NCBI RefSeq assembly: GCF_046119375.1
Contig: NW_027362773.1
Span: 162,130,001-162,194,000, forward strand
Source of the DNA: Phyllobates terribilis
Taxonomy: Eukaryota
Length of the DNA stretch: 64,000 nucleotides
Direction of reading: 5' to 3'
Below are positions 16,850-36,684 of the stretch, one piece after another; the stretch's first letter is position 1; each line of letters begins with the position of its first letter. A program made the position numbers and the translations under genes. The notes beneath the pieces were generated by a model. It was not told the DNA's origin and did no database searches. It saw only the letters and a program-made list of their open reading frames with translations.

Positions 16850-19178
16850 ATGACAGGTCACACCCCCCGCAGAAACCTTGCACATCTAGACACTCACACA
16901 CTCTGACTCTGTTCTACCACTGACATCCATATCCTCACTCCATGACACAGACAGCGCCACTGCTTTCTACAATGCCACTCTCGCATCAGCTATTGACTCG
17001 GTCGCCCCTCTTGTGCATGGCAGAGCGTGACGAGTCAACAGGCAACCCTGGCATAACACCCTCACTAAACAGCTTCGACAAGCGTCCAGGGTTGCGGAGC
17101 GGTGTTGGAAGAAAACACATACTCAAGAAGACTTCACTGCATTCAAACAAGCAACGCTCACATTCAAATCAGCCCTCACCTCTGCTAAACAGGCCTACTT
17201 CATAACCCTCATATCTTCCCTATCCTACAACCCCAAACAGTTATTCAACACTTATAACTCTCTCCTCCGCCCTCCACTGCCCCCTTCGACCTCCATCATC
17301 TCTGCTGAGGAGTTTGCCACACACTTCATAAACAAGATTGACCAAACACGGCAAGTCTTTACTGCCCAACCACCACAACCCCTTTGTTTTCCACAACATT
17401 TCCCTACCCCCATAACCTCCCTTCCCAACATCATGGAAAGAGACCTTACTCGTCTCCTCTCCAAATCACACCTCACCACATGTGCACTCGACACCATCCC
17501 ATCCCACCTCCTCCCCATCCTCACCCCCACACTTATCCCATCCCTAACCCATCTCTTCAACCTATCACTATCTTCTGGTACTTTCCCCGCTGCCTTCAAA
17601 CATGCCACAATCACGCCCATCCTCAAAAAGCCATCCCTCGACCCAACCGCCTTGTCCAGCTATCGCCCCATATCGCTGCTCCCATTTGCCTCCAAACTCC
17701 TTGAGCAACACGTTCACGCTGAACTTTCCTCCCACTTTTCATCTAACTCTCTCTTCGACAACCGACAATCCGGCTTCCACCGAAACTGCCCTTAGCAAAA
17801 TCACCAATGACTTACTTACAGCCAAAGCTAACAGACAATTCTCTGTACTCCTCCTTCTTGACCTGTCCTCTGCTTTCGATACTGTTGACCATTGCCTCCT
17901 ACTACAGATCCTCTGTTCCTTTGGTGTCAAAGACCTTGCCCTATCCTGGATCTCCTCATACCTTTCTAACCGCACGTTTAGCGTCTCCCACTCCCACACT
18001 ACCTCCTCGCCCCCTCTCTGTTGGAGTCCTTCAAGGCTCTGTCCTAGGACCCCTACTCTTCTCAATCTATACCCTTGGCCTGGGACAGCTCATAAAATCC
18101 CATGGCTTCCAGTACCATCTGTACGCTGATGACACCCAGATCTACCTCTCTGGCCCAGACTTCACCTCTCTGCTGTCCAGAATCCCAGCATGTCTAGCAG
18201 CCATATCCGCCTTCTTCTCCTCCCACTACCTCAAGCTCAATGTGGACAAAACTGAACTCATTATCTTTCCCCCATCTTGCATATCTTCCCCACCTGATCT
18301 TTCTATCACAATAAATGACATTACTCTTTCCCCTGTACCGTCAATCCCCTGCCTCGGAGTAACCCTTGACTCTGCCCTGTCCTTCAAACCACACATCCAA
18401 GCTCTCGCCACCTCCTGTCTCCTCCAGCTCAAAAATATTTCCAGAATCCGTCCTTTCCTCAACCCCCAATCTACTAAACTGCTTGTGCATGCCCTCATCA
18501 TCTCCCGCCTCGACTACTGCAACATCCTCCTCTGTGGCCTCCCTGCTAACACTCTCGCACCCCTCCAGTTCATCCTCAACTCTGCTGCGTGACTGGTCCA
18601 TCTCTCTCCTCGCTACTCCTCCGCTACCCCCCTTTGCAAATCCCTTCACTGGCTCCCATTCCCCCAGCGTATCCAGTTCAAACTACTAACACTGACCTAC
18701 AAAGCCGTCCATAACCTCTCTCCTCCGTACATCTCTGAACTAATCTCCCGATATATTCCCTCACGTAACCTCCGGTCCTCCCAAGACCTCCTTCTCTCCT
18801 CCACACTTATCCGTTCCTCACGCAATCGCCTCCAAGATTTCTCCCGAATATCCCCCGTCCTCTGGAATTCTGTGCCCCAACACGTCCGATTATCCACCAC
18901 ATCCGGATCCTTCAGACGGAACCTGAAAGCCCATCTCTTCAAGAAAGCCTACAGCCGGCCATGACCCCGTTGCCTCCTCAACAACACCGGAGCTGCTGCA
19001 GCCCCCCAACCTACTCTCTCCTTGCCCATCATCCTGGAGAATGTAAGCCCCCAAGGGCAGGGTCCTCTTCCCTCTGTACCAGTCTATCATTGTTAGTTTG
19101 TTTACTGTAAGTGGTATGTAACCCCTCCTTATGTACAGCGCCATGGAATCAATGGCGCTATATAAATTAATAATAATA
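16850..19178 (+). mobile_element. 5'-truncated, frameshifted L2/CR1-group LINE (reverse transcriptase region plus 3' tail)
   Basis: Split ORFs contain [46 protein letters not shown] (18122-18133) and LGVTLDS. The 3' end has the stem-loop AGCGCCAT-ggaatca-ATGGCGCT (19137-19159) and a (TAA)n tail. Confidence 0.92.
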
Positions 19179-20076
19179 TGGAGCCGTCACCCCGCTTCCA
19201 TCGCCTCCTAAGTGGCGGCACCGTTCTGATCCTACACGAGTCGCCGGTGAAGCTGGAACACAAGCGATCCCAACCCAGGAGGGGTCAGGGTGGTCTCAGG
19301 TCAGGGGGCTACTGATACTAACCAATCAGAAAACCAGTGGATATTACACTGGTGGTACCGGGTCCGATTTTTTTTTAGCCGCTGGGACAACATCTGGTTT
19401 TCACGGGATCGATAATAAACGCTAATTAGGATTTCATACATCCAAGGACCAGGTACGGGCTGGACCGCCAGTGCCCCTTAGGACAGCCAGACGTCTGACC
19501 CCACCATGACGTTTCTTCCCGAGGGTTGATGCCTTTAGATTACTAGAAGCAAAGGGTTAATTGGCAGCTGTTGTATGACCCAACCCAGAGCCGTAAGGAA
19601 ACGTTCACACCCTGATGGAAATTTTCTGCAGCCAAAATAGTCAGTAGCCGCGGCCCGTACAAAAAAAATTGTGCAGGTTTTTTGGTGCAGATTTCATTGA
19701 ATTCTAAAGGCTCAAAACGTTCCCGAAATCCGCAGCGGAGGTTTGATGGGTAGAAATGGCGCTGCCGCTCGACCACGCGGAGGATCTCTCAGGCAGCGTG
19801 CCGCTGGGATCTGGTGAAACCTCATCTATAATGATAACACTAAGGCCATGTTCACAAAAATGGTGGTCTCCAATTATTATTATAACCTATAAAGTATAGT
19901 GAACTGGAGCAGGTCTGTACAGGATCCATCCACAGATGGAGTGAGGTCCTACACACCGCCATCAAAGCGGATCACACTGGATCCCTGCCGCTCTGAGGGC
20001 TATCAACCCGTTTCCATTATAATCAATGGCTGATCAAGAAGCTTCCAGGCGGCTTGGACCTCACAACAATACGTCA

Positions 20077-20300
20077 CCAGAGACTGAGGCGAAACAAAGG
20101 GAACCTGTCACCAGAGACTGAGGCGAAACAAAGGGAATCGGTTACCAGAGACTGAGCCGAAACAAAAGGAATCTGCCACCAGAGACTGAGTCGAAACAAA
20201 AGGAATCTGTCACCAGAGACTGAGCCGAAACAAAGGGAATCGGTCACCAGAGACTGAGCCGAAACAAAGGGAATCGGTCACCAGAGACTGAGCCGAAACA
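20077..20300. repeat. 34-bp tandem repeat, ~6.5 copies
   Basis: ccagagactgagccgaaacaaagggaatcggtca at 20077, 20111, 20145 ... 20281. Confidence 0.9.
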
Positions 20301-20348
20301 ACAATAAGGCCATGGCCTACTGACCGAATACTGATAGTGGGGCCGTGG

Positions 20349-20830
20349 CCTTAAAGGGAATGTGTCATCAGAAAATGACCTGTTTACATAAAGGTTTTGT
20401 AATAGATTTTTTTTTTTTACTAATAATCCTGAAAAAAAAAGTAAAATGAATAATCAGACAATTTTCACACTGATCACTGTGACTTTTTAGATTAATATGC
20501 CACGTCCTTTCAGGAAGAGTTGTCAGCAGTTTCATTATCATCATAAGGTTTACAATGACTGATATCACCTCTATATACAGTAGCTAACACAGGATCCACC
20601 ATTCACAATAGGTGATGTCACAGCTCACCTCCTCCTGTACAATGACTGATAACACCTCTATATACAGTAGATAAGACAGGATCCACCTTTCACAATAGAG
20701 GATGTCACAGCTCACCTCCTCCCCCTCCTCTACAATGACTGATAACATCTCTATATACAACTGATAATCTATTGTGAATGGCGGATACCGTGTTATGTCA
20801 CAGCTCACCTCCTCCTCCTCCTGTACAGTG
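20349..20830. mobile_element. TTAA-AGGG-terminated (T2/Kolobok-type) MITE with internal short direct repeats
   Basis: Starts ttaaagggaatgtgtcatcag; contains three copies of gatgtcacagctcacctcctcc / cacctctatatacag. Confidence 0.55.
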
Positions 20831-21569
20831 ACCTTTGCACACGTTCATTAGATGCTTCAGTAAAAATACACAGAGCCTGTTTGTTCATTGCAGCTCATGT
20901 ACATGTGGATTTCTTAAAAACAGTAAAAATTCTAAGATTTCTACTTCAGCTTTTTAATTTGGATTGTGATATTTAAAAAAAAAAAAAGTAAATTTAAACA
21001 GAAAATCCGGATTTAAACAATCGTTCATTTTCTGACGCCATTTCCCATCATTGTCAGATCGGCATAAATGGCTGCTGCTAATGAGGAGACGTCACAGTTA
21101 CATCGGTATTTACAGAGGACTCAGGGGCCGGGACCCCAACGATTGCAGAAGTGATCAGCTGAGGGTGTGGTGGGCTTCGCTCTCCTACGGAAAGTCCACA
21201 CCCGCTAACCCTGAGCGCCCGAGCGGAGGGGCGCAGCGCCAGCCCAATGTTTCTGCCATCTCTTATTTTAACATCCCGACGTCCCCATTAACAGGAGCTT
21301 ATGATGCGTCACCTCAATCAATACTTAGGACTTTGGGTGGGACTTGTTTGTCCGATCTTGTCGGGATCTTCGGCCTCCAAACACAAGCAGCTAAGCAGAG
21401 ATTCAGCAGAGGCAAGAAGACGGCAGAGGACACGGGCAGGTTCACTAAAGCCACCGTTTTAGGCTGGTGGTCCCACCCTGTTTTACTAGGACCAGATTTT
21501 AATATAATTTTTCAGATCCAAAAGCAACAAATGACGTCTCCGGCTTTCCCCGAGTCGTCAGACAAAGCC

Positions 21570-22430
21570 TCATGCCAGTAAAAACTGCAGATTGGTAAGC
21601 AGAAAGCGAATGCCGCTGGTGACGGTCACCACGGAGGTGGCGGGGTTTAGCTTGAAGGTGTTGGCGTCCCCTTTCTTGTATTGATCCCGGAAGACATAAA
21701 TGCAGCCGTTGCAGCTGGCGATTTTCCAGAGCGCTGGTCGTGAGCTCCAGACCTCGGGCAGGCAGAGCCTGGTGAAGCTGTCCAGCAGCGGGTTATAGCA
21801 CACCAGCGAGTCTCCCTCCGCCACGATGAACACCAGGTCCTTGTGGACGGCCGCGTGCATTCGGCCGGCAAACGGCAGCAGGTAGGGTTTGACGTGGCAC
21901 TTCTCCGTGGTAGTGTCGAAACACTGGATGAGGCGAGAGGGTTTGGTGAAGAAGTCCAGGTCGTTCTCCTCGCCTCCCATTAGGTAGATCAGACCGTTCA
22001 GGTTCACCCCCGCCGCCCCGGAGATGGAGACCTCCAGCTGACTAGTCTCTGTCCAGACATTGTCCGCTACTCGATAGTAAATGACCACATTAGAGAGCGA
22101 GTCCTGCAGGGTCTTACCCCCCAGGGAGTAGATGGCATCCTTGCCGGGCACGGACACCAGCGTATGCTGCAGACGGTCCCGGGGAAGCGGTGCGCATCGC
22201 TCCCAGTCCATGGTCTCCATATTACATTTCCACATTCGACGAGGGATGGACCCTCCTACCACGTAGAGATCGGGGCCATGTTTGCAGGCGGCGGTGATCT
22301 GGTGGCACAGACTGTTCTGTCCGCTGACACTTATGGAGTCGTCCTGCGCACAATGGAGCGAGACGGCAATGGAGTGCGTGCGAGATTCCTCCTTCCCGAT
22401 CAGGTAGATGTGCACGTTTTCCCCGATTTC
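21570..22430 (-). CDS. KBTBD4: KBTBD4 last coding exon (kelch repeats)
   Basis: tctttaag|EIGENVHIYLIGKEESRTHSIAVSLHC...YVVGGSIPRRMWKCN...LTNLQFLLA*; 861 nt, phase 0. Confidence 0.96.
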   Translation of the reverse strand, partial: EIGENVHIYLIGKEESRTHSIAVSLHCAQDDSISVSGQNSLCHQITAACKHGPDLYVVGGSIPRRMWKCNMETMDWERCAPLPRDRLQHTLVSVPGKDAIYSLGGKTLQDSLSNVVIYYRVADNVWTETSQLEVSISGAAGVNLNGLIYLMGGEENDLDFFTKPSRLIQCFDTTTEKCHVKPYLLPFAGRMHAAVHKDLVFIVAEGDSLVCYNPLLDSFTRLCLPEVWSSRPALWKIASCNGCIYVFRDQYKKGDANTFKLNPATSVVTVTSGIRFLLTNLQFLLA

Positions 22431-22727
22431 CTTAAAGACATAATACACATGGAAACACTTGAAGGGTCATTAAAAGGGATTTACTCCAAAAAAGCAACAA
22501 GGTCCTAGCTCTTATAAGTCAGAGGATCTACAGAAAGGAGCGCCGTCCCAGAAGGAAAGAAACCTTGCAAGATTGCAAGAGCCACATATTGGATGTGAAA
22601 ATTGCCTTTTCCGAGAGGATCTGAACTCTAATGCCACTTATTGAATGAAGCGAGCCTAAAAGTCAATATCGACTCTTTAACGAGCCTCGTCACATGACTT
22701 TGGTTTTTATCCTAACCAGAATCTCTG

Positions 22728-22771
22728 TTTGAAGACTCGTGTTTCAGGGCTTTGCCCCTCCTCAGTGCAAA
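22728..22771 (-). ncRNA. Type I hammerhead ribozyme motif
   Basis: Minus strand reads tttgca-CTGAGGA-ggggc(aaa)gccct-GAAAC-acga-GTC-ttcaaa. The CUGANGA and GAAA cores, stem II (5 bp), a minimal stem III and a GUC cleavage triplet are present; stem I pairs at 5 of 6 positions. Confidence 0.75.
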
Positions 22772-23531
22772 GCAAGAGACCCGATTCGGCTGTATGAGAA
22801 GCCTCTGACTGGGGTCTAAGGGGTAATGTCTCTCCTTGGAGAGTGGTAAACTGGCGATGGTGTCAAATAAACTGTGGGTTATCATAGATAGGTGTCAGAA
22901 CATGCAGAGCATCACAGGTACTATAGAAAATTAGTCAACGCGCAGAACATCACAACTATGTTATTAAGGAGTCACAACAAGCACAGCATTGCAGCTAATA
23001 CAGAAAGGAGTAACAACACGCAGAGCATAAAGTTTTGATTATTTGGATGTGACATGTACCACCTACTAGAGAGGAGCCAATCGATTTGCAGGACCTTGAT
23101 CCAGCGGCCATGCCAGTGTTTCATGGACGCCAGACGGGAGCCCTGTGAATCGCCTCCTACCTCCCGGCATTCCCCAGTCCAGCCTGGCGCTACATCAAGC
23201 CACCACGATGACGTTGTGCCGCGCCTACAAATCCGAAGGGAAGCCGGGCATGCCGGCAGGAGGAAGTGGCTCACAGCGCTCACTTACGATGGCCACGGAT
23301 GACTAACATGGCCACTGGACTAGGGTCCTGCACCTCAACTCGCTCATCTGTACCAGCCTCCTCACCTTGTACGGTGCAACCTCTACGGCAGAGGTATTAT
23401 ACTGGCGGTGATTCTTTCAGCAGGATAATGGTCGGTTAAGAACGTGACAAGGAGATGAAGGTTATGACTTTATAACCCTTTAAAAAATAATTACCACAAA
23501 ATGCTCAGAACACGAAGATGTTTAACAAGTT

Positions 23532-23537
23532 TTTATT
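23532..23537 (-). terminator. Candidate polyA signal of the nested P2X7-C-terminal-like gene
   Basis: TTTATT on plus (AATAAA on minus), ~230 nt past the stop at 23766, in an AT-rich UTR-like stretch. Confidence 0.45.
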
Positions 23538-23765
23538 TAAAACTTTTAGTGAAAAATTACAACAAACTTCATCTAAAACAGCAAATGTACAACTCAATCA
23601 AATGAAAGCTTTGCTCCTTATACAGTGCGATAACTTTTACATTTTTTAAAACTTTTTACAAACTTTTTATACAAAACAAAACTTGGAAAAATTAGAACTT
23701 TTTTTTTCCCCATATGAAATATAAAACCGTATAACTGTGATACGCGAGATTACTTGGAGCATCAC

Positions 23766-23961
23766 TTAGAAATTCATGTCGGCCAGCGGACCTGACGCGT
23801 ACTCGGAATACCATTTGAAGGCGGTATAACCTCCGTCAGGGCTCAGGAACGTCTGCTGAATTTTACTGACTACACATGAAGGCACTGATAATCCGCGTCC
23901 CTACCCAAGAAATCCGTAGATCACGTTAGTGAATTTGCGATAGGCTGCCTCTCGAAGGTGC
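23766..23961 (-). pseudogene. Nested P2X7 C-terminal (ballast)/nanor-like pseudogene, terminal exon
   Basis: ttttctccag|(R)HLREAAYRKFTNVIYGFLG*GRGLSVPSCVVSKIQQTFLSPDGGYTAFKWYSEYASGPLADMNF*; resembles the LR..AYR...PSCV...F...DG.Y..F motif of the P2X7 C-terminus. In-frame TAG at 23901-23903. Confidence 0.85.
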
Positions 23962-24273
23962 CTGGAGAAAAGAAAAAAAAAACAAAACGATATAAGCGGG
24001 TTCATAATTCTGCTCTGGGTATGAGCAATAATTGCATCAGGTGGATCAGCAACCTGCAGCACTCCAGCTGTTGCAAAACTACAACTCCCAGTATCCTCGG
24101 GCAGCCGCAGACTTCTGCCTCATCATTTCAATCTGTTAGTCTTAACAGATTTACCCGTTCTTTTTGCACGGATTACTTTATATTGACGGAACAGCAATAT
24201 CACATTATGGGATGATTTGCTGTGGAAACGTCATAAAAATAAAACATGCAAAAAAAAAAAGAAGTAAATTTAC

Positions 24274-25724: not shown

Positions 25725-26665
25725 ATGTGGGACCCATTATAGTGTATGGCGCACTATGCGGGGGCCCATTATAGTGTATGGCGCACTATGCGGGGGCCCA
25801 TTATAGTGTATGGCGCACTATGCGGGGGCCCATTATAGTGTATAGAGGACTATGCGAGGCCATACATTATACTGTATGGCGCACTATGTGGGGCCCATTA
25901 TTCTGTATGGAGGACTATGCGGGGCCCATTATTCTGTATGGAGGACTATGTAGGGACCATTATACTGTATGGAGGACTATGTGGGGTCCATTATTCTGTA
26001 TGGAGGACTATGCGGGGCCATTATTCTGTATGGAGGACTATGCGAGGCCACACATTATACTGTATGGAGGACTATGCGAGGCCACACATTATTCTGTATG
26101 GAGGACTATGCGAGGCCACACATTATACTGTATGGAGGACTATGCGAGGCCACACATTATACTGTATGGAGGACTATGCGAGGCCACACATTATTCTGTA
26201 TGGAGGACTATGCGAGGCCACACATTATACTGTATGGAGGACTATGCGAGGCCACACATTATACTGTATGGAGGACTATGCGGGGCCCATTATTCTGTAT
26301 GGAGGACTATGTGGAGCCCATTATACTGTATGGAGGACTATGTGGGGCCCATTATTCTGTATGGAGGACTATGTGGGGCCCATTATTCTGTATGGAGGAC
26401 TATGTGGGGCCCATTATTCTGTATGGAGGACTATGTGAGGCCCATTATTCTGTACGGAGGACTATGTGGGCCCATTATACTGTATGGAGGACTATGTGGG
26501 GCCATTATACTGTATGGAGGACTATGTGGGGCCATTATTCTGTATGGAGGACTATGTGGGGCCATTATTCTGTATGGAGGACTATGTGGGGCCATTATTC
26601 TGTATGGAGGACTATGTGGGGCCCATTATACTGTATGGAGGACTATGTGGGGCCATTATTCTGTA
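25725..26665. repeat. ~27-31-bp minisatellite (gtatggaggactatgYgRggccYattatWct), ~31 copies, probably inside a hAT-like MITE
   Basis: Direct tandem units; preceded by catgtcaaactc...gagggccaaatctcgcccc, which resembles a hAT MITE left end. Confidence 0.85.
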
Positions 26666-27008
26666 TACTGGTTGGCCCACGATTTTGTCCAAGTTTTTCA
26701 TTGTGGCCCTAATAATCCCGTCTGTTGCCCATAGCAACCAAGCAGGCCTCAGCTCTCACTTTACCTCAGCAGTGTGAGGGATGCCTGCGGCCACCATTTC
26801 CTTCCTGCGGTCGGTCGTTGTTTCTCCGCGGAGGACGGCAGTGATGTGTGAGCACAACATGGCGGCTTGTGATAGTGCAGGCGACGTACACATGGGGTCA
26901 GTCACAGACACGACGGCTCTGCGGGGCAATGGCCGCTCCTTCCCGCTCCAGTAATAAGCTGAATACACGGCTTGTAGTAACACAGGATCCACAGAGAAAA
27001 AAAAAATA

Positions 27009-28180
27009 CACTATTCTCAAAAAGTTTGGGATATTTGGCTTTTGGGTGACATTTCTGGATGACCCTACAGTGTCCTTTGACCTCCATCAGGAAAACTTAA
27101 TGCGACACCGCTGGATTTCTGAATCCACACGTCCAGCCGGTCAACGTCTCAGGACGGTTTCCACAACTTGCTCTTCTCGAACGAGGAGCTTAAATGACAA
27201 AATCCACACCAGGGGTTTGATCCATGAATCGGCCAGTACATGTCGGGGCTTAATTAGAATTGGGTTCTAAACCGTCCTCCACATGGCGCTGTTCACATTC
27301 TGACATCATGAGACCAAGACGACACCTGACAATTGATCATCAGGACCGGCCATTGTGAGGCTCCAAGCAGGAGGTTCCCAGACGGAAGAGACCACCGAGC
27401 TGAGAGAGTCATCAGCGGGGTGCAACAGAGACAGAGAGAGACACAGGAAGAGGCAGAGACGTGGACGTCCTCTGCCACACCCCACAGCTCATTCAGAATC
27501 GGATGATGAAAGTCACACAACTCCGGGCACATGTAAGGGAGGCGAGAGGCACCAAGTGTCATGTCAGACCATCCAAAACAGTTTACACCAGCGTGGTCTG
27601 CGTGCCAGACGGACTGCAAGGTCCCTGAGCAATCACCGGCGTCATCTGCAAGGTCCCCGACCAATCACCAGCATCATCTGCAAGATCCTATACCACACCA
27701 CCAAGCACTGGAGTGGCGTCATCTGCAAGGTCCCCGACCAATCACCAGCATCATCTGCAAGATCCTATACCACACCACCAAGCACTGGAGTGGCGTCATC
27801 TGCAAGGTCCCCGACCAATCACCAGCATCATCTGCAAGATCCTATACCACACCACCAAGCACTGGAGTGGCGTCATCTGCAAGGTCCCCGACCAATCACC
27901 AGCATCATCTGCAAGATCCTATACCACACCACCAAGCACTGGAGTGGCGTCATCTGCAAGGTCCCCGACCAATCACCAGCATCATCTGCAAGATCCTATA
28001 CCACACCACCAAGCACTGGAGTGGCGTCATCTGCAAGGTCCCCGACCACACCAGCATGGGCCAGGGAGCATCTACGCTGGATGAGGGACCAGTGGCCTCA
28101 GTGCTGTTCACTGATGAAAGTCACAGGACGCTGCGCCACATGATAAGCTATTGAGACATTGACATTTCTTGTTGGGATAT
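27009..28180 (+). mobile_element. Degraded, truncated Tc1/mariner element with an internal 77-bp tandem amplification
   Basis: TA|cactattctcaaaaagtttggg terminus; remnant transposase (QTIQNSLHQRGLRARR, WAREHLRW, VLFTDES); 77-bp unit at 27661, 27738, 27815, 27892 and 27969. Confidence 0.8.
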
Positions 28181-28224: not shown

Positions 28225-30668
<2,444 letters not shown>

Positions 30669-31029: not shown

Positions 31030-31520
31030 GGCTGCGATGCTCTGCGTGTCCTGACCCCTTTCTCCCACAGCTGCGATGCTCTGCGTGTCCTGACCCCTTT
31101 CTATTACACCTGCGATGCTCTGCGTGTCCTTACCTCTGCGATGCTCTGCGTGTCCTGAGCCCTTTCTATCATAGCAGCGATGCTCTGCGTGTCCTGAGCC
31201 CTTTCTATCATAGCAGCGATGCTCTGCGTGTCCTGAGCCCTTTCTATCATAGCAGCGATGCTCTGCGTGTCCTGACCCCTTTCTATCATAGCAGCGATGC
31301 TCTGCGTGTCCTGACCCCTTTCTATCATAGCAGCGATGTTCTGGTTGTCCTGACCCCTTTCTGTCACAGCTGCGATGCTCTGCGTGTCCTGATATCTTTC
31401 TATCATAGCAGCGATGCTCTGCATGTCCTGACCCCTTTCTATCACAGCTGCGATGCTCTGCGTGTCCTGACCCCTTTCTATCATAGCAGCGATGCTCTGC
31501 GTGTCCTGACACCTGCGATG
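31030..31520. repeat. ~39-bp minisatellite next to the KBTBD4 exon donor
   Basis: gcgatgctctgcgtgtcctgacccctttctatcatagca, ~12 copies, ending ~25 nt from the donor at 31543. Confidence 0.9.
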
Positions 31521-31543
31521 ATCCTACTGCAGACTGTTCCTAC

Positions 31544-31650
31544 CTTCAGGCTGGAGACCAGCACCTCGGAGAATCCCTCCCGCTCCTCCTTATTGTAGTG
31601 GATCCAGCTCTTTATGGCGGCGGTCGGATTCTGAGAACAGGGAACGCCGT
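31544..31650 (-). CDS. KBTBD4: KBTBD4 middle coding exon (BACK domain end)
   Basis: ccatcag|(D)GVPCSQNPTAAIKSWIHYNKEEREGFSEVLVSSLK|gtagga; 107 nt, phase 1-0. Confidence 0.95.
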
Positions 31651-32439
31651 CTGATGGAAGAAGAAGAAGAAAAAGAATCAGGAAGAAATTGACAGGACGA
31701 CAATCTGGACTCACAGGAGAACGAGGCCACCGGACGACGGGCAGCGAGCGGAAGGGAACGGCTCACACGTCATAAGATCTCGGACTTCCTTTTTATGCCC
31801 CATTATTATTATTAATTCTCCAGCGCAGGACGAGAACCACTAAACCAAATTTTAATATTACCATTTCAGTAGGTGAAGACTTCTGGCTTTTCTGCTCAGC
31901 TTCTTCACACTTCCACTTCAGGTCAATCTATTTTGTATATCGATAGATCCAACTTTTATGGACGCCGGGATATCAAATAGAGATTTTTTTATTCTTAATT
32001 GGAGAATTGTAGTTAACTCAATTTTTTTTTTACTCCCCATAGGAGACTTAAAGGGGCTGTCCAGGTTTGGCACGTAAGTCTATAGTCACTCTATGCGACT
32101 GCAGACTTATGAATCCTCACAGTGTGCACAGCGCAATGTGAATGCATTGTGGAGGTAGGGGTGGAGGACGATGGGTACCCAAAATGGACACCCTGGGATA
32201 TTCCTGGATAAGCTTGTGTGCATCATGTGCACGCGCCCTTATGACGCTGCCGTGTAGGGAAGATGAGAGAGAGCAGTTCACTCAGTGCGGAGATTCAGTT
32301 TTCAGCCTCAGGACAGTTCCCTGATCCCGGAGCTTTGGGAAACTACAATTCCCAGCATGCACCTAGTAGTTGGTGCACATTGAGAATTATATAACTGCAG
32401 AGTGACAGATGTAGGATCAGGCTGAGCGCAGTCACTCAC

Positions 32440-33046
32440 CTGCCAGGATGTCCGTGAGTAATCGCAGCGGCAGGTTCAGGAACTCCTCGCTATCACACAG
32501 CTGTGACAGGTGGGTTTTGGCGCAGTGTTTTGCCGCAGTGTAAAGGGAGGTGTCGCTGTGCTGATCCGCCAGCCACATGATCTGCAGACAGTTCTTCACC
32601 TGCACCGTCCGCACCAGGAAGCGGGAGCACTCCTCAAACAAGGAGGTCAGCTGGTACATGTCCGCCACCTCGTAGGTCTCCTGCAGCTCCTCCAGCCGCA
32701 GCTTCACTGTCCCGTGATAAATGTAATCCACCAGGAGCTGGAACACGCCGGCGCTAACATCCTGCAGCTGGATCACGCGGTTACGTCCCTCCTTCAGATT
32801 GGACGCGAACATGGAGCGAAAGAAGCAGCTCTGGGCCGACAGAACCAGCCGGTGCAACTGGAACTCCTTCCCCTCCACCAGGATGGTGACGTCAGCAAAC
32901 AGCTGCTCCTCCATGCAAAGCTTCATGATGCTCTGAGCCACCCGGCTGCTGTGGGAGCGATCCGTAAACGTGTACGTCACAAAGTAATTCTCCTCCGTGG
33001 TGCCGGCCAGGTTCTGAGCCGCCGCTGCGTCCTCTGAAGGGTCCAT
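32440..33046 (-). CDS. KBTBD4: KBTBD4 first coding exon (BTB/BACK)
   Basis: MDPSED...ENYFVTYTFTDRSHSSRVAQSIMKLCMEEQLFADVT...HRLVLSAQSCFFRSMF...LLTDILA G|gtgagt; acceptor ctccag at 33076/33075; total ORF 524 aa. Confidence 0.97.
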
Positions 33047-34838: not shown

Positions 34839-34914
34839 GTGAGGACTGGAATACACCGCCATATAGTGAGGGGAGGGGTAGTACTACAAGGCTCAGCACT
34901 GGCAGATCACTGGA

Positions 34915-36520
34915 GAGTCAGAATATGTAATGTATGTACACAGTGACTGCACCAGCAGAATAGTGAGTGCAGCTCTGGAGTATAATACAGGATGTAACTC
35001 AGGATCAGTAATGTAATGTATGTACACAGTGACTGCACCAGCAGAATAGTGAGTGCAGCTCTGGAGTATGATACAGGATGTAACTCAGGATCAGTAATGT
35101 AATGTATGTACACAGTGACTGCACCAGCAGAATAGTGAGTGCTGCTCTGGAGTATAATACAGGATGTAACTCTGGATCAGTAATATAATGTATGTACACA
35201 GTGACTGCACCAGCAGAATAGTGAGTGCAGCTCTGGGGTATAATACAGGATGTAACTCAGGATCAGTAATGTAATGTATGTACACAGTGACTGCACCAGC
35301 AGAATAGTGAGTGCAGCTCTTGAGTATAATACAGGAGGTAACTCAGGATCAGTAATGTAATGTATGTACACAGTGACTGCACCAGCAGAATAGTGAGTGC
35401 TGCTCTGGAGTATAATACAGGATGTAACTCTGGATCAGTAATATAATGTATGTACACAGTGACTGCACCAGCAGAATAGTGAGTGCAGCTCTGGGGTATA
35501 ATACAGGATGTAACTCAGGATCAGTAATGTAATGTATGTACACAGTGACTGCACCAGCAGAATAGTGAGTGCAGCTCTGGAGTATAATACAGGATGTAAC
35601 TCTGGATCAGTAATATAATGTATGTACACAGTGACTGCACCAGCAGAATAGTGAGTGCAGCTCTGGAGTATAATACAGGATGTAACTCTGGATCAGTAAT
35701 ATAATGTATGTACACAGTGACTGCACCAGCAGAATAGTGAGTGCAGCTCTGGGGTATAATACAGGAGGTAACTCAGGATCAGTAATGTAATGTATGTACA
35801 CAGTGACTACACCAGCAGAATAGTGAGCGCAGCTCTGGAGTATAATACAGGATGTAACTCAGGATCAGTAATGTAATGTATATACACAGTGACTGCACCA
35901 GCAGAATAGTGAGTGCAGCTCTGGAGTATAATACAGGAGGTAACTCAGGATCAGTAATGTAATGTATGTACACAGTGACTGCACCAGCAGAATAGTGAGT
36001 GCAGCTCTGGAGTATAATACAGGATTTAACTCAGGATCAGTAATGTAATGTATGTACATAGTGAGTGCAGCTCTGGAGTATAATACAGGATGTAACTCAG
36101 GATCAGTAATGTAATGTATGTACATAGTGAGTGCAGCTCTGGAGTATAATACAGGATGTAACTCAGGATCAGTAATGTAATGTATGTACACAGTGACTGC
36201 ACCAGCAGAATAGTGAGTGCAGCTCTGGAGGATAATACAGGATGTAACTCAGGATCAGTAATGTAATGTATATACACAGTGACTGCACCAGCAGAATAGT
36301 GAGTGCAGCTCTGGAGTATAATACAGGATGTAACTCCGGATCAGTAATGTAATGTATATACACAGTGACTGCACCAGCAGAATAGTGAGTGCAGCTCTGG
36401 AGTATAATACAGGATGTAACTCCGGATCAGTAATGTAATGTATGTACACAGTGTCTGCACCAGCAGAATAGTGAGTGCAGCTCTGGAGTATAATACAGGA
36501 TGTAACTCAGGATCAGTACA
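34915..36520. repeat. 86-bp tandem repeat, ~19 copies, in NDUFS3 intron 1
   Basis: gtgagtgcagctctggagtataatacaggatgtaactcaggatcagtaatgtaatgtatgtacacagtgactgcaccagcagaata (period 34991 to 35077). Confidence 0.96.
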
Positions 36521-36684
36521 GTATATATTATACACGTGTTGGCCACCCCCAGGCTGAGTTATATCTTTGCATATAATAGTGATGTGATTTGGGCAGAATC
36601 TTACATGTTGTTGTTCTTCTCTTCTTTCTGTGTTGCTGTTGTTGATGTTGTGAGATTGGTGGAGTCTGAAATACTTAGGATTAA

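What the first reader, a model, noticed from the sequence alone, without database searches (positions are those of the whole stretch)
22715..22782. Sense-strand type I hammerhead ribozyme in the last intron of KBTBD4
All conserved core nucleotides are present (C3U4G5A6-G7-G8A9, G12A13A14, A15.1, GUC triplet), with predicted cleavage between 22734 and 22733 on the minus strand. Stem II has 5 bp and an AAA loop; stem III is a 2-bp minimal stem; stem I is tttgca/ttcaaa (one mismatch), extended by tctct/agaga across an internal loop that could contact loop II. It is co-oriented with KBTBD4, ~300 nt upstream of the final 3' splice site and ~800 nt downstream of the nested gene's candidate polyA signal. 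It could cut the pre-mRNA co-transcriptionally, or it may mark a retrozyme or Penelope-type non-autonomous element. No second hammerhead was seen nearby.
Basis: partly seen in the sequence, partly recalled or inferred. Interest (0 to 1): 0.75.

Follow-up and report, generated by a model that had tools for sequence, protein, structure and literature searches.

The report
Decayed hammerhead repeat copy in intron
The hammerhead ribozyme motif is really there, but it is one worn-down, solitary copy of a very abundant frog jumping-gene repeat that carries such ribozymes, so it is an ordinary and probably inert passenger in the KBTBD4 intron.

Summary
The motif is in the sequence as described: minus strand 22782 to 22715, predicted cut after C17 (22734), 304 nt upstream of the last KBTBD4 exon. 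It is not a chance match: a descriptor of the same stringency found 1 hit in the window and 0 in 300 shuffles.

It is not a dedicated KBTBD4 element either. Public contigs of two frog species show that 22598-22930 is high-copy repeat DNA. The motif lies in a roughly 125-135 nt piece (22714 to about 22848) found in thousands of contigs.

Most other copies differ from this one where this copy is defective:
- They carry G at 1.2, which pairs with C2.2.
- They carry U at 22737, which makes helix III a perfect ACACGUGU palindrome.

The ancestor was therefore a normal metazoan type I hammerhead of the Penelope/retrozyme kind, and this copy has decayed:
- It has a stem I mismatch, a G.U pair at 10.1-11.1 and a broken helix III palindrome.
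- It has a new competing 7-bp helix.
- It scores 12 bits in Rfam, against 30 for a good control.
- No second copy for dimer cleavage was found in 64 kb.

Self-cleavage could not be tested, because only contigs were available. The scan has already reported this class elsewhere in this genome. Interest is low.

The parts
22715..22782 (-). Type I hammerhead-like motif. It has outer and inner helix I, the CUGAGGA box, helix II GGGGC/GCCCU with an AAA loop, the GAAA box, a 2-bp helix III with an ACGA loop, and GUC.
   Evidence: Read directly. It is the only descriptor hit in the window, with 0 in 300 shuffles. Rfam Hammerhead_1 matches 22728-22771 at 12.2 bits, E 2.8 in a 101-nt scan.
22733..22734 (-). 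Predicted scissile bond, 3' of C17 (22734) and 5' of U1.1 (22733).
   Evidence: Follows from the standard hammerhead numbering applied. It is not shown experimentally, because only contigs were on hand and they carry no end information.
22714..22848 (-). Truncated copy of a high-copy dispersed repeat (the 'B part') that ends with the hammerhead. Homology to other copies stops sharply at 22714. Other copies run on beyond about 22838-22848, so this copy is cut short at its 5' side.
   Evidence: many contigs of organisms A and E span 22714-22837 at 80-87% identity, for example records 19-22 and 28-30. The loose-end consensus behind 22838 has 51 records. Summed word depth is about 20,000-24,000 against about 9-14 in the single-copy flanks.
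22614..22700 (.). A second, even more abundant repeat (the 'A part') that abuts the hammerhead-bearing piece. It is not similar to the B part.
   Evidence: depth is about 130,000-140,000 in X2, and it is also present in organisms B and E and in a possible RNA run; there is no similarity between A and B beyond the shared junction.
22749..22773 (-). Competing helix GCUUUGC (22773-22767) with GCAAAGC (22755-22749). It buries the CUGAGGA box in a loop.
   Evidence: It appears in the MFE and centroid folds. It depends on the letters at 22750/22751, which 82-97% of the other copies do not share.
21573..22430 (-). Last coding exon of KBTBD4 (context).
   Evidence: 286 aa align to residues 233-518 of human KBTBD4, E 1.7e-179.

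Best explanation
The motif is the ribozyme end of a 5'-truncated, mutated, solitary copy of a high-copy retroelement-type repeat. That repeat carries a type I hammerhead of the kind described for Penelope-like elements and non-LTR retrozymes, which is abundant in frogs. The copy landed in sense orientation in the last intron of KBTBD4.

In the family, the ribozyme has a 6-bp helix I with a distal helix, a 4-bp helix II and a 2-bp helix III capped by the palindromic loop ACGU. By analogy with published amphibian and Penelope-type hammerheads, it would cleave multimeric element transcripts through a dimeric fold, in which two units form a long helix III.

This copy has since drifted:
- U at 1.2 breaks a helix I pair next to the cleavage site.
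- A at 22737 breaks the helix III palindrome.
- The letters at 22750/22751 create a competing hairpin.

It also has no neighbouring partner. It is therefore most likely inert or nearly so, and is simply spliced out with the intron.

Shown here: the motif, the repeat nature, the direction of the differences, and the absence of a partner in the window. Inferred: the retroelement class, the dimeric mechanism and the inactivity.
For: -: 22598-22930 is covered by thousands of contigs in DNA runs of organisms A and E. The flanks 22450-22597 and 23190 onward are at single-copy depth. Many contigs span exactly 22714-22837.
-, table 3, majority letters of the other copies:
  - 22732 A>C: 1900 of 2025 depth in X2 and 389 of 423 in X14. 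On the minus strand this is U1.2 to G, which pairs with C2.2.
  - 22737 T>A: 2420 of 2733 and 605 of 653. This turns ACACGAGU into ACACGUGU, a perfect palindrome.
  - 22780 C>T turns the outer G.U pair into A-U.
  - 22750/22751 changes give a 4-bp helix II and remove the competing helix.
- a pattern written from those majority letters (24 fixed bases) finds 5 metagenome contigs with textbook type I hammerheads. This helix I / helix III version is therefore a natural ribozyme type.
- one of those contigs scores 30.3 bits (E 2e-6) against Rfam HH9 in a 101-nt scan. The window copy reaches only 12.2 bits.
- the hammerhead fold has a predicted population of about 3e-7 for the window copy, against about 3e-4 for the control.
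- no second copy or second hammerhead was found in 64 kb.
- Literature:
  - PMC4209133: metazoan type I hammerheads have helix I of 6 bp, helix II of 4 bp and helix III of 1-2 bp with a palindromic loop. They are active as dimers. X. tropicalis has about 9,000 minimal hammerheads.
  - PMC3088659: Xenopus hammerheads are associated with interspersed repeats.
  - PMC7761336: amphibian motifs need dimeric constructs.
  - Preprint 10.64898/2026.07.22.740005: about 44% of Xenopus retrozyme copies overlap introns, and 1 of 9 dimer constructs cleaved in vitro.
Against: - The copies themselves could not be fetched. The family picture rests on per-position majority letters and piece coordinates from short Logan contigs, aligned at 80% or more to this one copy. 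Linkage between positions is unknown, and 46 difference rows were not shown.
- The element class was not tested. No frog repeat library was on hand, no Penelope RT/GIY-YIG ORF or pLTR was linked, and no tandem unit was seen.
- Depth falls from about 10,000 at 22750 to about 1,200-2,700 over 22726-22737. I attribute this to alignments being clipped at this copy's four mismatches. It could instead mean that many relatives lack the 3' third of the ribozyme.
- Nearest-neighbour folding does not model hammerhead tertiary contacts, so the population estimate is only relative.
- All invariant core bases are intact, so residual activity is not excluded.
Confidence: 0.8

Rival explanations
1. The motif is an active, host-relevant intronic ribozyme. 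It would self-cleave the KBTBD4 pre-mRNA co-transcriptionally 304 nt before the last exon. That would lower full-length mRNA or favour transcripts ending at the nested cassette's polyA site, in the manner proposed for the conserved amniote intronic hammerheads HH9 and HH10.
For: - All invariant core nucleotides are present and the three-helix type I topology can be drawn.
- The motif is in sense orientation within the last intron, about 800 nt downstream of an AATAAA.
- There is precedent for domestication of frog-like repeat hammerheads in RECK and C10orf118 introns (PMC3088659 discussion).
Against: - This copy is worse than its own family at helix I (1.2-2.2) and at the helix III palindrome.
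- It has a G.U pair at 10.1-11.1 and only a 2-bp helix III, with no partner in 64 kb. Amphibian type I motifs need dimers (PMC7761336, PMC4209133).
- It scores 12.2 bits, against 30.3 for a good relative.
- The predicted folds sequester the CUGAGGA box.
- Sense orientation is a 1-in-2 event.
- No conservation or cleavage data are available.
Confidence: 0.06
2. The motif is a chance match to the hammerhead consensus, in DNA that has nothing to do with ribozymes.
For: - The Rfam score is weak: E 2.8 even in a 101-nt scan, and nothing was listed in wider scans.
- The bare core pattern occurs 4 times in the window, against 2 expected.
- A scan of very many windows will turn up some chance motifs.
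Against: - The full descriptor gave 0 hits in 300 shuffles.
- The motif sits in a repeat whose majority letters repair exactly the two defective structural positions.
- The repaired helix I / helix III version occurs in bona fide hammerheads elsewhere.
Confidence: 0.03
3. The repeat is another kind of element, such as a SINE, a MITE or fold-back element, or a composite of the A and B parts. On this reading the hammerhead-like segment is not used for self-cleavage in its life cycle.
For: - The B part is only about 125-135 nt here. It abuts a different and far more abundant repeat, with an inverted 12-nt A-rich junction.
- Some contigs join A and B on opposite strands (the 'unexplained' entry of the notebook).
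- No Penelope ORF, pLTR or tandem unit was linked to it.
Against: - Core boxes and three helices are kept in the majority of copies of two species.
- The architecture equals the published metazoan type I consensus (PMC4209133).
- Other windows of this genome are reported to hold about 332-bp retrozyme-like and Penelope-type hammerhead repeats (unchecked notes).
Confidence: 0.1

Closest known systems
Repeat-associated type I hammerheads of frogs: Xenopus interspersed-repeat hammerheads and Penelope-like-element minimal or canonical hammerheads (PMC3088659; PMC4209133)
   Same: - It occurs in a frog genome as a high-copy dispersed repeat.
- It has type I topology, with helix I of 6 bp plus a distal helix.
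- It has a short helix III with, in the family majority, a palindromic loop.
- Copies are often solitary and lie in non-coding DNA, including introns.
   Different: - This copy has lost one helix I pair and the palindrome, and has G.U at 10.1-11.1.
- No link to a Penelope ORF or pLTR could be tested.
- The flanks are unrelated to the five metagenome hammerhead loci found here.
Animal non-LTR retrozymes and newt satellite 2 (PMC7761336; preprint 10.64898/2026.07.22.740005)
   Same: - It is a non-coding repeat with a type I hammerhead that needs a dimeric fold.
- It is abundant in amphibians.
- Monomer copies are dispersed, and many lie in introns.
   Different: - The defining tandem arrangement and circular RNA were not seen here.
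- There is only one truncated unit of about 125-135 nt.
- No second hammerhead was found in 64 kb.
Conserved intronic hammerheads of amniotes, HH9 in RECK and HH10 in C10orf118 (Rfam RF02275 and RF02277; PMC3088659)
   Same: It is a sense-strand type I hammerhead in an intron of a protein-coding gene, and probably derives from the same sort of amphibian-like repeat.
   Different: - HH9 and HH10 are held intact at orthologous sites over long evolutionary times and score well against their models.
- This copy is degraded relative to its family, scores 12 bits, and no orthologous conservation could be shown.

Membership tests
Hammerhead ribozyme, type I (Rfam clan CL00010) | Invariant core: C3 U4 G5 A6 N7 G8 A9, G12 A13 A14, A15.1-U16.1, H17 | tested here: met
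   CUGAGGA at 22765-22759, GAAA at 22745-22742, U16.1 at 22735 and C17 at 22734.
Hammerhead ribozyme, type I (Rfam clan CL00010) | G10.1-C11.1 pair closing helix II at the core. From my own knowledge, this pair is nearly universal in natural hammerheads. | tested here: not met
   G22758 lies opposite U22746, giving a G.U wobble. Good relatives such as L003 have G-C.
Hammerhead ribozyme, type I (Rfam clan CL00010) | Three helices around the core, with helix I open (type I), that form a stable fold | tested here: inconclusive
   The helices can be drawn: helix I has 5 of 6 pairs plus a 5-bp outer helix, helix II has 5 bp and helix III has 2 bp. The fold is -6.7 against an MFE of -19.8 kcal/mol, with population about 3e-7. 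The control L003 gives about 3e-4. Energy models ignore tertiary contacts.
Hammerhead ribozyme, type I (Rfam clan CL00010) | Covariance-model score at or above the family's gathering score | tested here: not met
   Hammerhead_1 scores 12.2 bits against 34, and nothing was listed. One caveat applies. Textbook hammerheads in L001-L005 also miss the gathering score, although L003 reaches 30.3 bits with E 2e-6.
Hammerhead ribozyme, type I (Rfam clan CL00010) | Site-specific self-cleavage that gives 2',3'-cyclic phosphate and 5'-OH ends | not testable with these tools
   All runs found are kept as contigs, so there is no information on starts or ends.
Penelope-like-element / retrozyme hammerhead repeats | Multi-copy repeat in the genome | tested here: met
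   Thousands of contigs of two species lie on 22598-22930, and 22714-22837 is spanned repeatedly.
Penelope-like-element / retrozyme hammerhead repeats | Short helix III (1-2 bp) with a small palindromic loop that allows a dimeric ribozyme (PMC4209133) | tested here: inconclusive
   The family majority has ACACGUGU, a perfect palindrome, from 22737 T>A in 88-93% of depth. The window copy has ACACGAGU, which as a dimer would have two A.A mismatches.
Penelope-like-element / retrozyme hammerhead repeats | A second hammerhead in tandem or nearby (pLTR pair or tandem retrozyme units) | tested here: not met
   There is no other copy of the repeat and no other descriptor hit in 64 kb. There is also no repeat structure in 22400-23600.
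Penelope-like-element / retrozyme hammerhead repeats | Homology to a Penelope pLTR or RT/GIY-YIG ORF, or circular RNA of unit length | not testable with these tools
   No eukaryotic repeat library or frog genome could be searched, and the contigs could not be fetched.
Conserved intronic hammerheads (HH9/HH10 type) | Retention of an intact motif at the orthologous intron position across distant species | not testable with these tools
   Organism E has contigs on the single-copy flank 22464-22562. None is listed that bridges into the repeat.

The most novel reading that the evidence does not exclude
Despite its defects, the copy keeps a low level of self-cleavage in the nascent KBTBD4 transcript. 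It lies about 800 nt downstream of the polyA signal of the transposon-derived cassette nested in the same intron. There it could act as a co-transcriptional cleavage element that helps end the alternative cassette-terminated isoform and tunes how much full-length KBTBD4 mRNA is made.
Probability: 0.04. Interest if true: 0.55.

Novelty: new member of a known kind. Interest (0 to 1): 0.15.

Why it matters
It matters little for biology as it stands. It is one more degraded copy of the hammerhead-bearing repeats already known to litter frog genomes, and the scan has met the class repeatedly in this same genome.

Two practical points are worth keeping:
- Rfam gathering thresholds miss even textbook Penelope/retrozyme-type hammerheads. 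A blank Rfam scan therefore does not dismiss such motifs.
- Laying public contigs at low stringency shows quickly whether a lone ribozyme motif is a repeat copy, and whether it is better or worse than its family. That separates relics from candidates for domestication.

If this copy did cleave, it would be a young, lineage-specific example of the route that gave amniotes HH9 and HH10.

Tried and rejected
- Rfam at gathering threshold over the whole window gave nothing, and an E-value scan of 701 nt listed no hammerhead. I rejected this as evidence of absence after the positive control also failed the gathering score.
- The MFE fold does not give the hammerhead. This is only weak evidence, because good minimal hammerheads do not fold that way either.
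- The search for a partner or other copies in the window found none. It used blastn with word size 9, repeat finders and the descriptor.
- A search of earlier findings by sequence was blank.
- The metagenome scan returned 5 loci that share only the ribozyme, not the flanks. They serve as a control but not as family members, so no covariation test on true copies was possible.
- I began a class-specific covariance model from those loci (alignment A2) and dropped it for two reasons. The loci had been selected with a pattern derived partly from this copy, so its score would be circular. The helix II columns of the two subfamilies also did not align in register.
- I tested the idea that the A part and the B part are inverted copies of one element. 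There is no similarity beyond the junction.
- I tested for a tRNA-derived SINE. ARAGORN found no tRNA-like gene.
- RNA evidence for cleavage was not obtainable, because no run is kept as raw reads.
- I described the family only position by position and did not write out or fold a consensus of the repeat.

Full report
**1. Observation**

Read on the minus strand from 22782 to 22715, the sequence is UCUCU UGC UUUGCA | CUGAGGA | GGGGC AAA GCCCU | GAAA | C ACGA G | UC | UUCAAA C AGAGA.

- Every invariant hammerhead position is present: C3-A9 at 22765-22759, G12-A14 at 22745-22743, A15.1 at 22742, U16.1 at 22735 and C17 at 22734.
- The predicted scissile bond lies between 22734 and 22733.

The context also holds:
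- 21573-22430 (-) encodes the C-terminal 286 residues of KBTBD4, aligning to residues 233-518 of the human protein with E 1.7e-179.
- The BTB/BACK exon is the ORF 32432-33046 (-). A small exon reading SDGVPCSQNPT...SLK lies at about 31540-31650 (-).
- The motif is therefore in the last intron, in sense, 304 nt upstream of the last exon. It lies about 800 nt downstream of AATAAA at 23537-23532.

The motif is not a chance hit at window scale. A descriptor requiring the core boxes, at least 4 contiguous pairs in helix II, at least 2 in helix III and at least 5 of 6 in helix I found exactly this site and none in 300 dinucleotide-preserving shuffles. The bare core pattern alone is not unusual, with 4 hits against 2.0 expected.

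**2.

- The pair that closes helix II at the core is G10.1.U11.1 rather than G-C.
- The helix I mismatch (U1.2/C2.2) is the second pair from the cleavage site, and the rest of inner helix I is A-U rich.
- Helix III has 2 bp. As a dimer, its segment ACACGAGU would form 6 of 8 pairs with two A.A mismatches.
- Rfam lists no hammerhead at gathering score in the window and none at E up to 10 in 701 nt. In a 101-nt scan it lists only Hammerhead_1 at 12.2 bits against a gathering score of 34, with E 2.8.
- The predicted MFE and centroid folds pair GCUUUGC (22773-22767) with GCAAAGC (22755-22749). That buries the CUGAGGA box.
- The hammerhead fold evaluates to -6.7 kcal/mol against an MFE of -19.8, a predicted population of about 3e-7 that falls further with flanks.

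**3. What it is**

I laid public Logan contigs on 22450-23550 at 80% likeness. The runs were a DNA run of the same species (X2), a DNA run of another species (X14, organism E), a possible RNA run (X10) and a run of a third species (X11).

- The flanks 22450-22597 and 23190 onward are at single-copy depth, about 9-14 in X2.
- 22598-22930 is covered by thousands of contigs in both DNA runs. 2607 and 2085 records were laid, most of them under 90% alike.
- Three pieces can be told apart:
  - an extremely abundant A part, 22614-22700;
  - a B part, 22714 to about 22838-22848, which holds the motif;
  - a 39-nt minisatellite, 22880-22930.
- Many contigs of both species span exactly 22714-22837 at 80-87% identity while running on into other sequence at both ends.
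- Beyond 22838 the other copies share a continuation that this copy follows for only about 10 more bases. This copy is therefore cut short on its 5' side in ribozyme orientation.
- The hammerhead ends 7 nt before the sharp 3' boundary at 22714.

**4. Direction of the differences**

Table 3 gives the letters that most other copies carry.

- At 22732, 94% of depth in X2 and 92% in X14 have C on the plus strand. On the ribozyme strand this is G at 1.2, which pairs with C2.2.
- At 22737, 89% and 93% have A on the plus strand, which is U on the ribozyme strand. This turns ACACGAGU into the perfect palindrome ACACGUGU: a 2-bp helix III with the palindromic loop ACGU.
- At 22780 the majority turns an outer G.U pair into A-U.
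- At 22750 and 22751 the majority gives a 4-bp helix II with a 5-nt loop. It also removes the competing GCUUUGC/GCAAAGC helix, which is thus peculiar to this copy.
- No majority difference is listed in the CUGAGGA, GAAA or GUC boxes.

The family ancestor therefore matches the published consensus architecture of metazoan type I hammerheads: helix I of 6 bp, helix II of 4 bp, and helix III of 1-2 bp capped by a small palindromic loop (PMC4209133). The window copy is a degraded member.

As a cross-check, I scanned metagenome contigs with a pattern written from the majority letters, GCACTGANGA, 11-15 N, GAAACACGTGTCTGC. It hit five contigs carrying textbook type I hammerheads. Their flanks are unrelated to the window, so they are other families with the same ribozyme type.

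**5. Calibration of Rfam**

Those five loci give no hit at gathering score either. In a 101-nt E-value scan, L003 reaches 30.3 bits against HH9 with E 2e-6. Two things follow:
- A blank Rfam scan does not dismiss this class.
- On the same footing the window copy, at 12.2 bits, is clearly poorer than an intact relative.

The thermodynamic control points the same way, at about 3e-4 against about 3e-7.

**6. Mechanism**

Published work holds the following:
- Amphibian and Penelope-type type I hammerheads have too weak a helix III to cleave as monomers. They act when two units are close, as in tandem repeats or pLTR pairs, by forming a dimer with an extended helix III (Forster et al. 1988 as cited in PMC4209133; PMC7761336).
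- Even then, activity in vitro is often low (PMC4209133).
- Only 1 of 9 Xenopus dimer constructs cleaved (preprint 10.64898/2026.07.22.740005).

Here there is no second copy or second hammerhead in 64 kb, the palindrome is broken, and helix I is weakened next to the cleavage site. I infer that the RNA is not cut, or only at a negligible rate, and leaves with the intron lariat. This is an inference. No run with raw reads was available, so RNA ends at 22733/22734 could not be examined.

**7. Comparison with what is known**

- Repeat-associated hammerheads in Xenopus were reported in 2010-2011 (PMC3088659).
- About 9,000 minimal hammerheads were counted in X. tropicalis (PMC4209133).
- About 44% of Xenopus non-LTR retrozyme copies overlap introns (preprint above).
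- The scan's own notes list many retrozyme-like units of about 332 bp and Penelope-type hammerhead repeats elsewhere in this genome. They include a follow-up on an intronic copy in a MAP7-family gene that was judged inert. I did not check these notes.

The present locus is a new, degraded member of a known kind. Membership of the Penelope versus retrozyme branch could not be settled. The tandem or paired arrangement was tested and not met in this window. Homology to pLTRs or to unit-length circular RNA could not be tested.

**8. Open points**

- The depth over 22709-22745 is about ten times lower than over 22746-22856. I attribute this to local alignments being clipped at this copy's four private letters (22726, 22727, 22732, 22737). 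It could also mean that many relatives lack the 3' third of the ribozyme.
- The A/B junction carries a 12-nt A-rich word in the orientation opposite to that found after most A copies. A few contigs join A and B on opposite strands. The relation of the two repeats is unexplained (see the 'unexplained' entry of the notebook).
- The majority letters at 22775 and 22726 would keep an outer helix I pair through a double change, U-A to A-U. Their linkage on the same copies could not be checked.

**9. Verdict**

- The retrozyme/Penelope-type reading is supported.
- The reading as a pre-mRNA-cutting ribozyme is unsupported and unlikely, at about 6%.
- Interest is low.

Noticed in passing
window 22614-22700: This is an extremely abundant repeat piece, with summed contig depth about 10,000 times the single-copy flanks. 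It is also present in two other frog species and in a possible RNA run. In other copies it is followed by AGGATAAAAGCCAAAACC, whereas here the same 12-mer stands in inverted orientation between it and the hammerhead piece.
   Followed up: partly
window 22880-23032 and 31030-31514: A 39-nt minisatellite with 4 units lies next to the repeat. It is related, on the opposite strand, to a longer 39-nt array further up the same intron. Both are multi-copy in the genome.
   Followed up: partly
L001-L005 (metagenome contigs ERZ1740055 and Ga0314693/Ga0314701): These are five contigs of unknown, presumably animal, origin with textbook type I hammerheads (CUGAUGAG ... CGAAACACGUGUC). All are missed by Rfam at gathering score, and L003 scores 30 bits against HH9.
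   Followed up: partly
window 34907-36535: A long tandem array of about 86-bp units lies upstream of the KBTBD4 BTB exon. It shows up as a ladder of near-identical 64-aa ORFs on the minus strand.
   Followed up: no
window 17400-18600 (+) and 28530-29650 (+): There are LINE-type reverse-transcriptase ORF fragments downstream of KBTBD4. There are also broken Tc1/mariner-type transposase ORFs inside the same last intron.
   Followed up: no
window 25780-26780 (+) and 27350-28150 (+): These are long open frames made of short tandem repeats (YGGLCGA.../WRTMWGP... and QHHLQDPIPHHQALEW...). They are probably minisatellites rather than genes.
   Followed up: no
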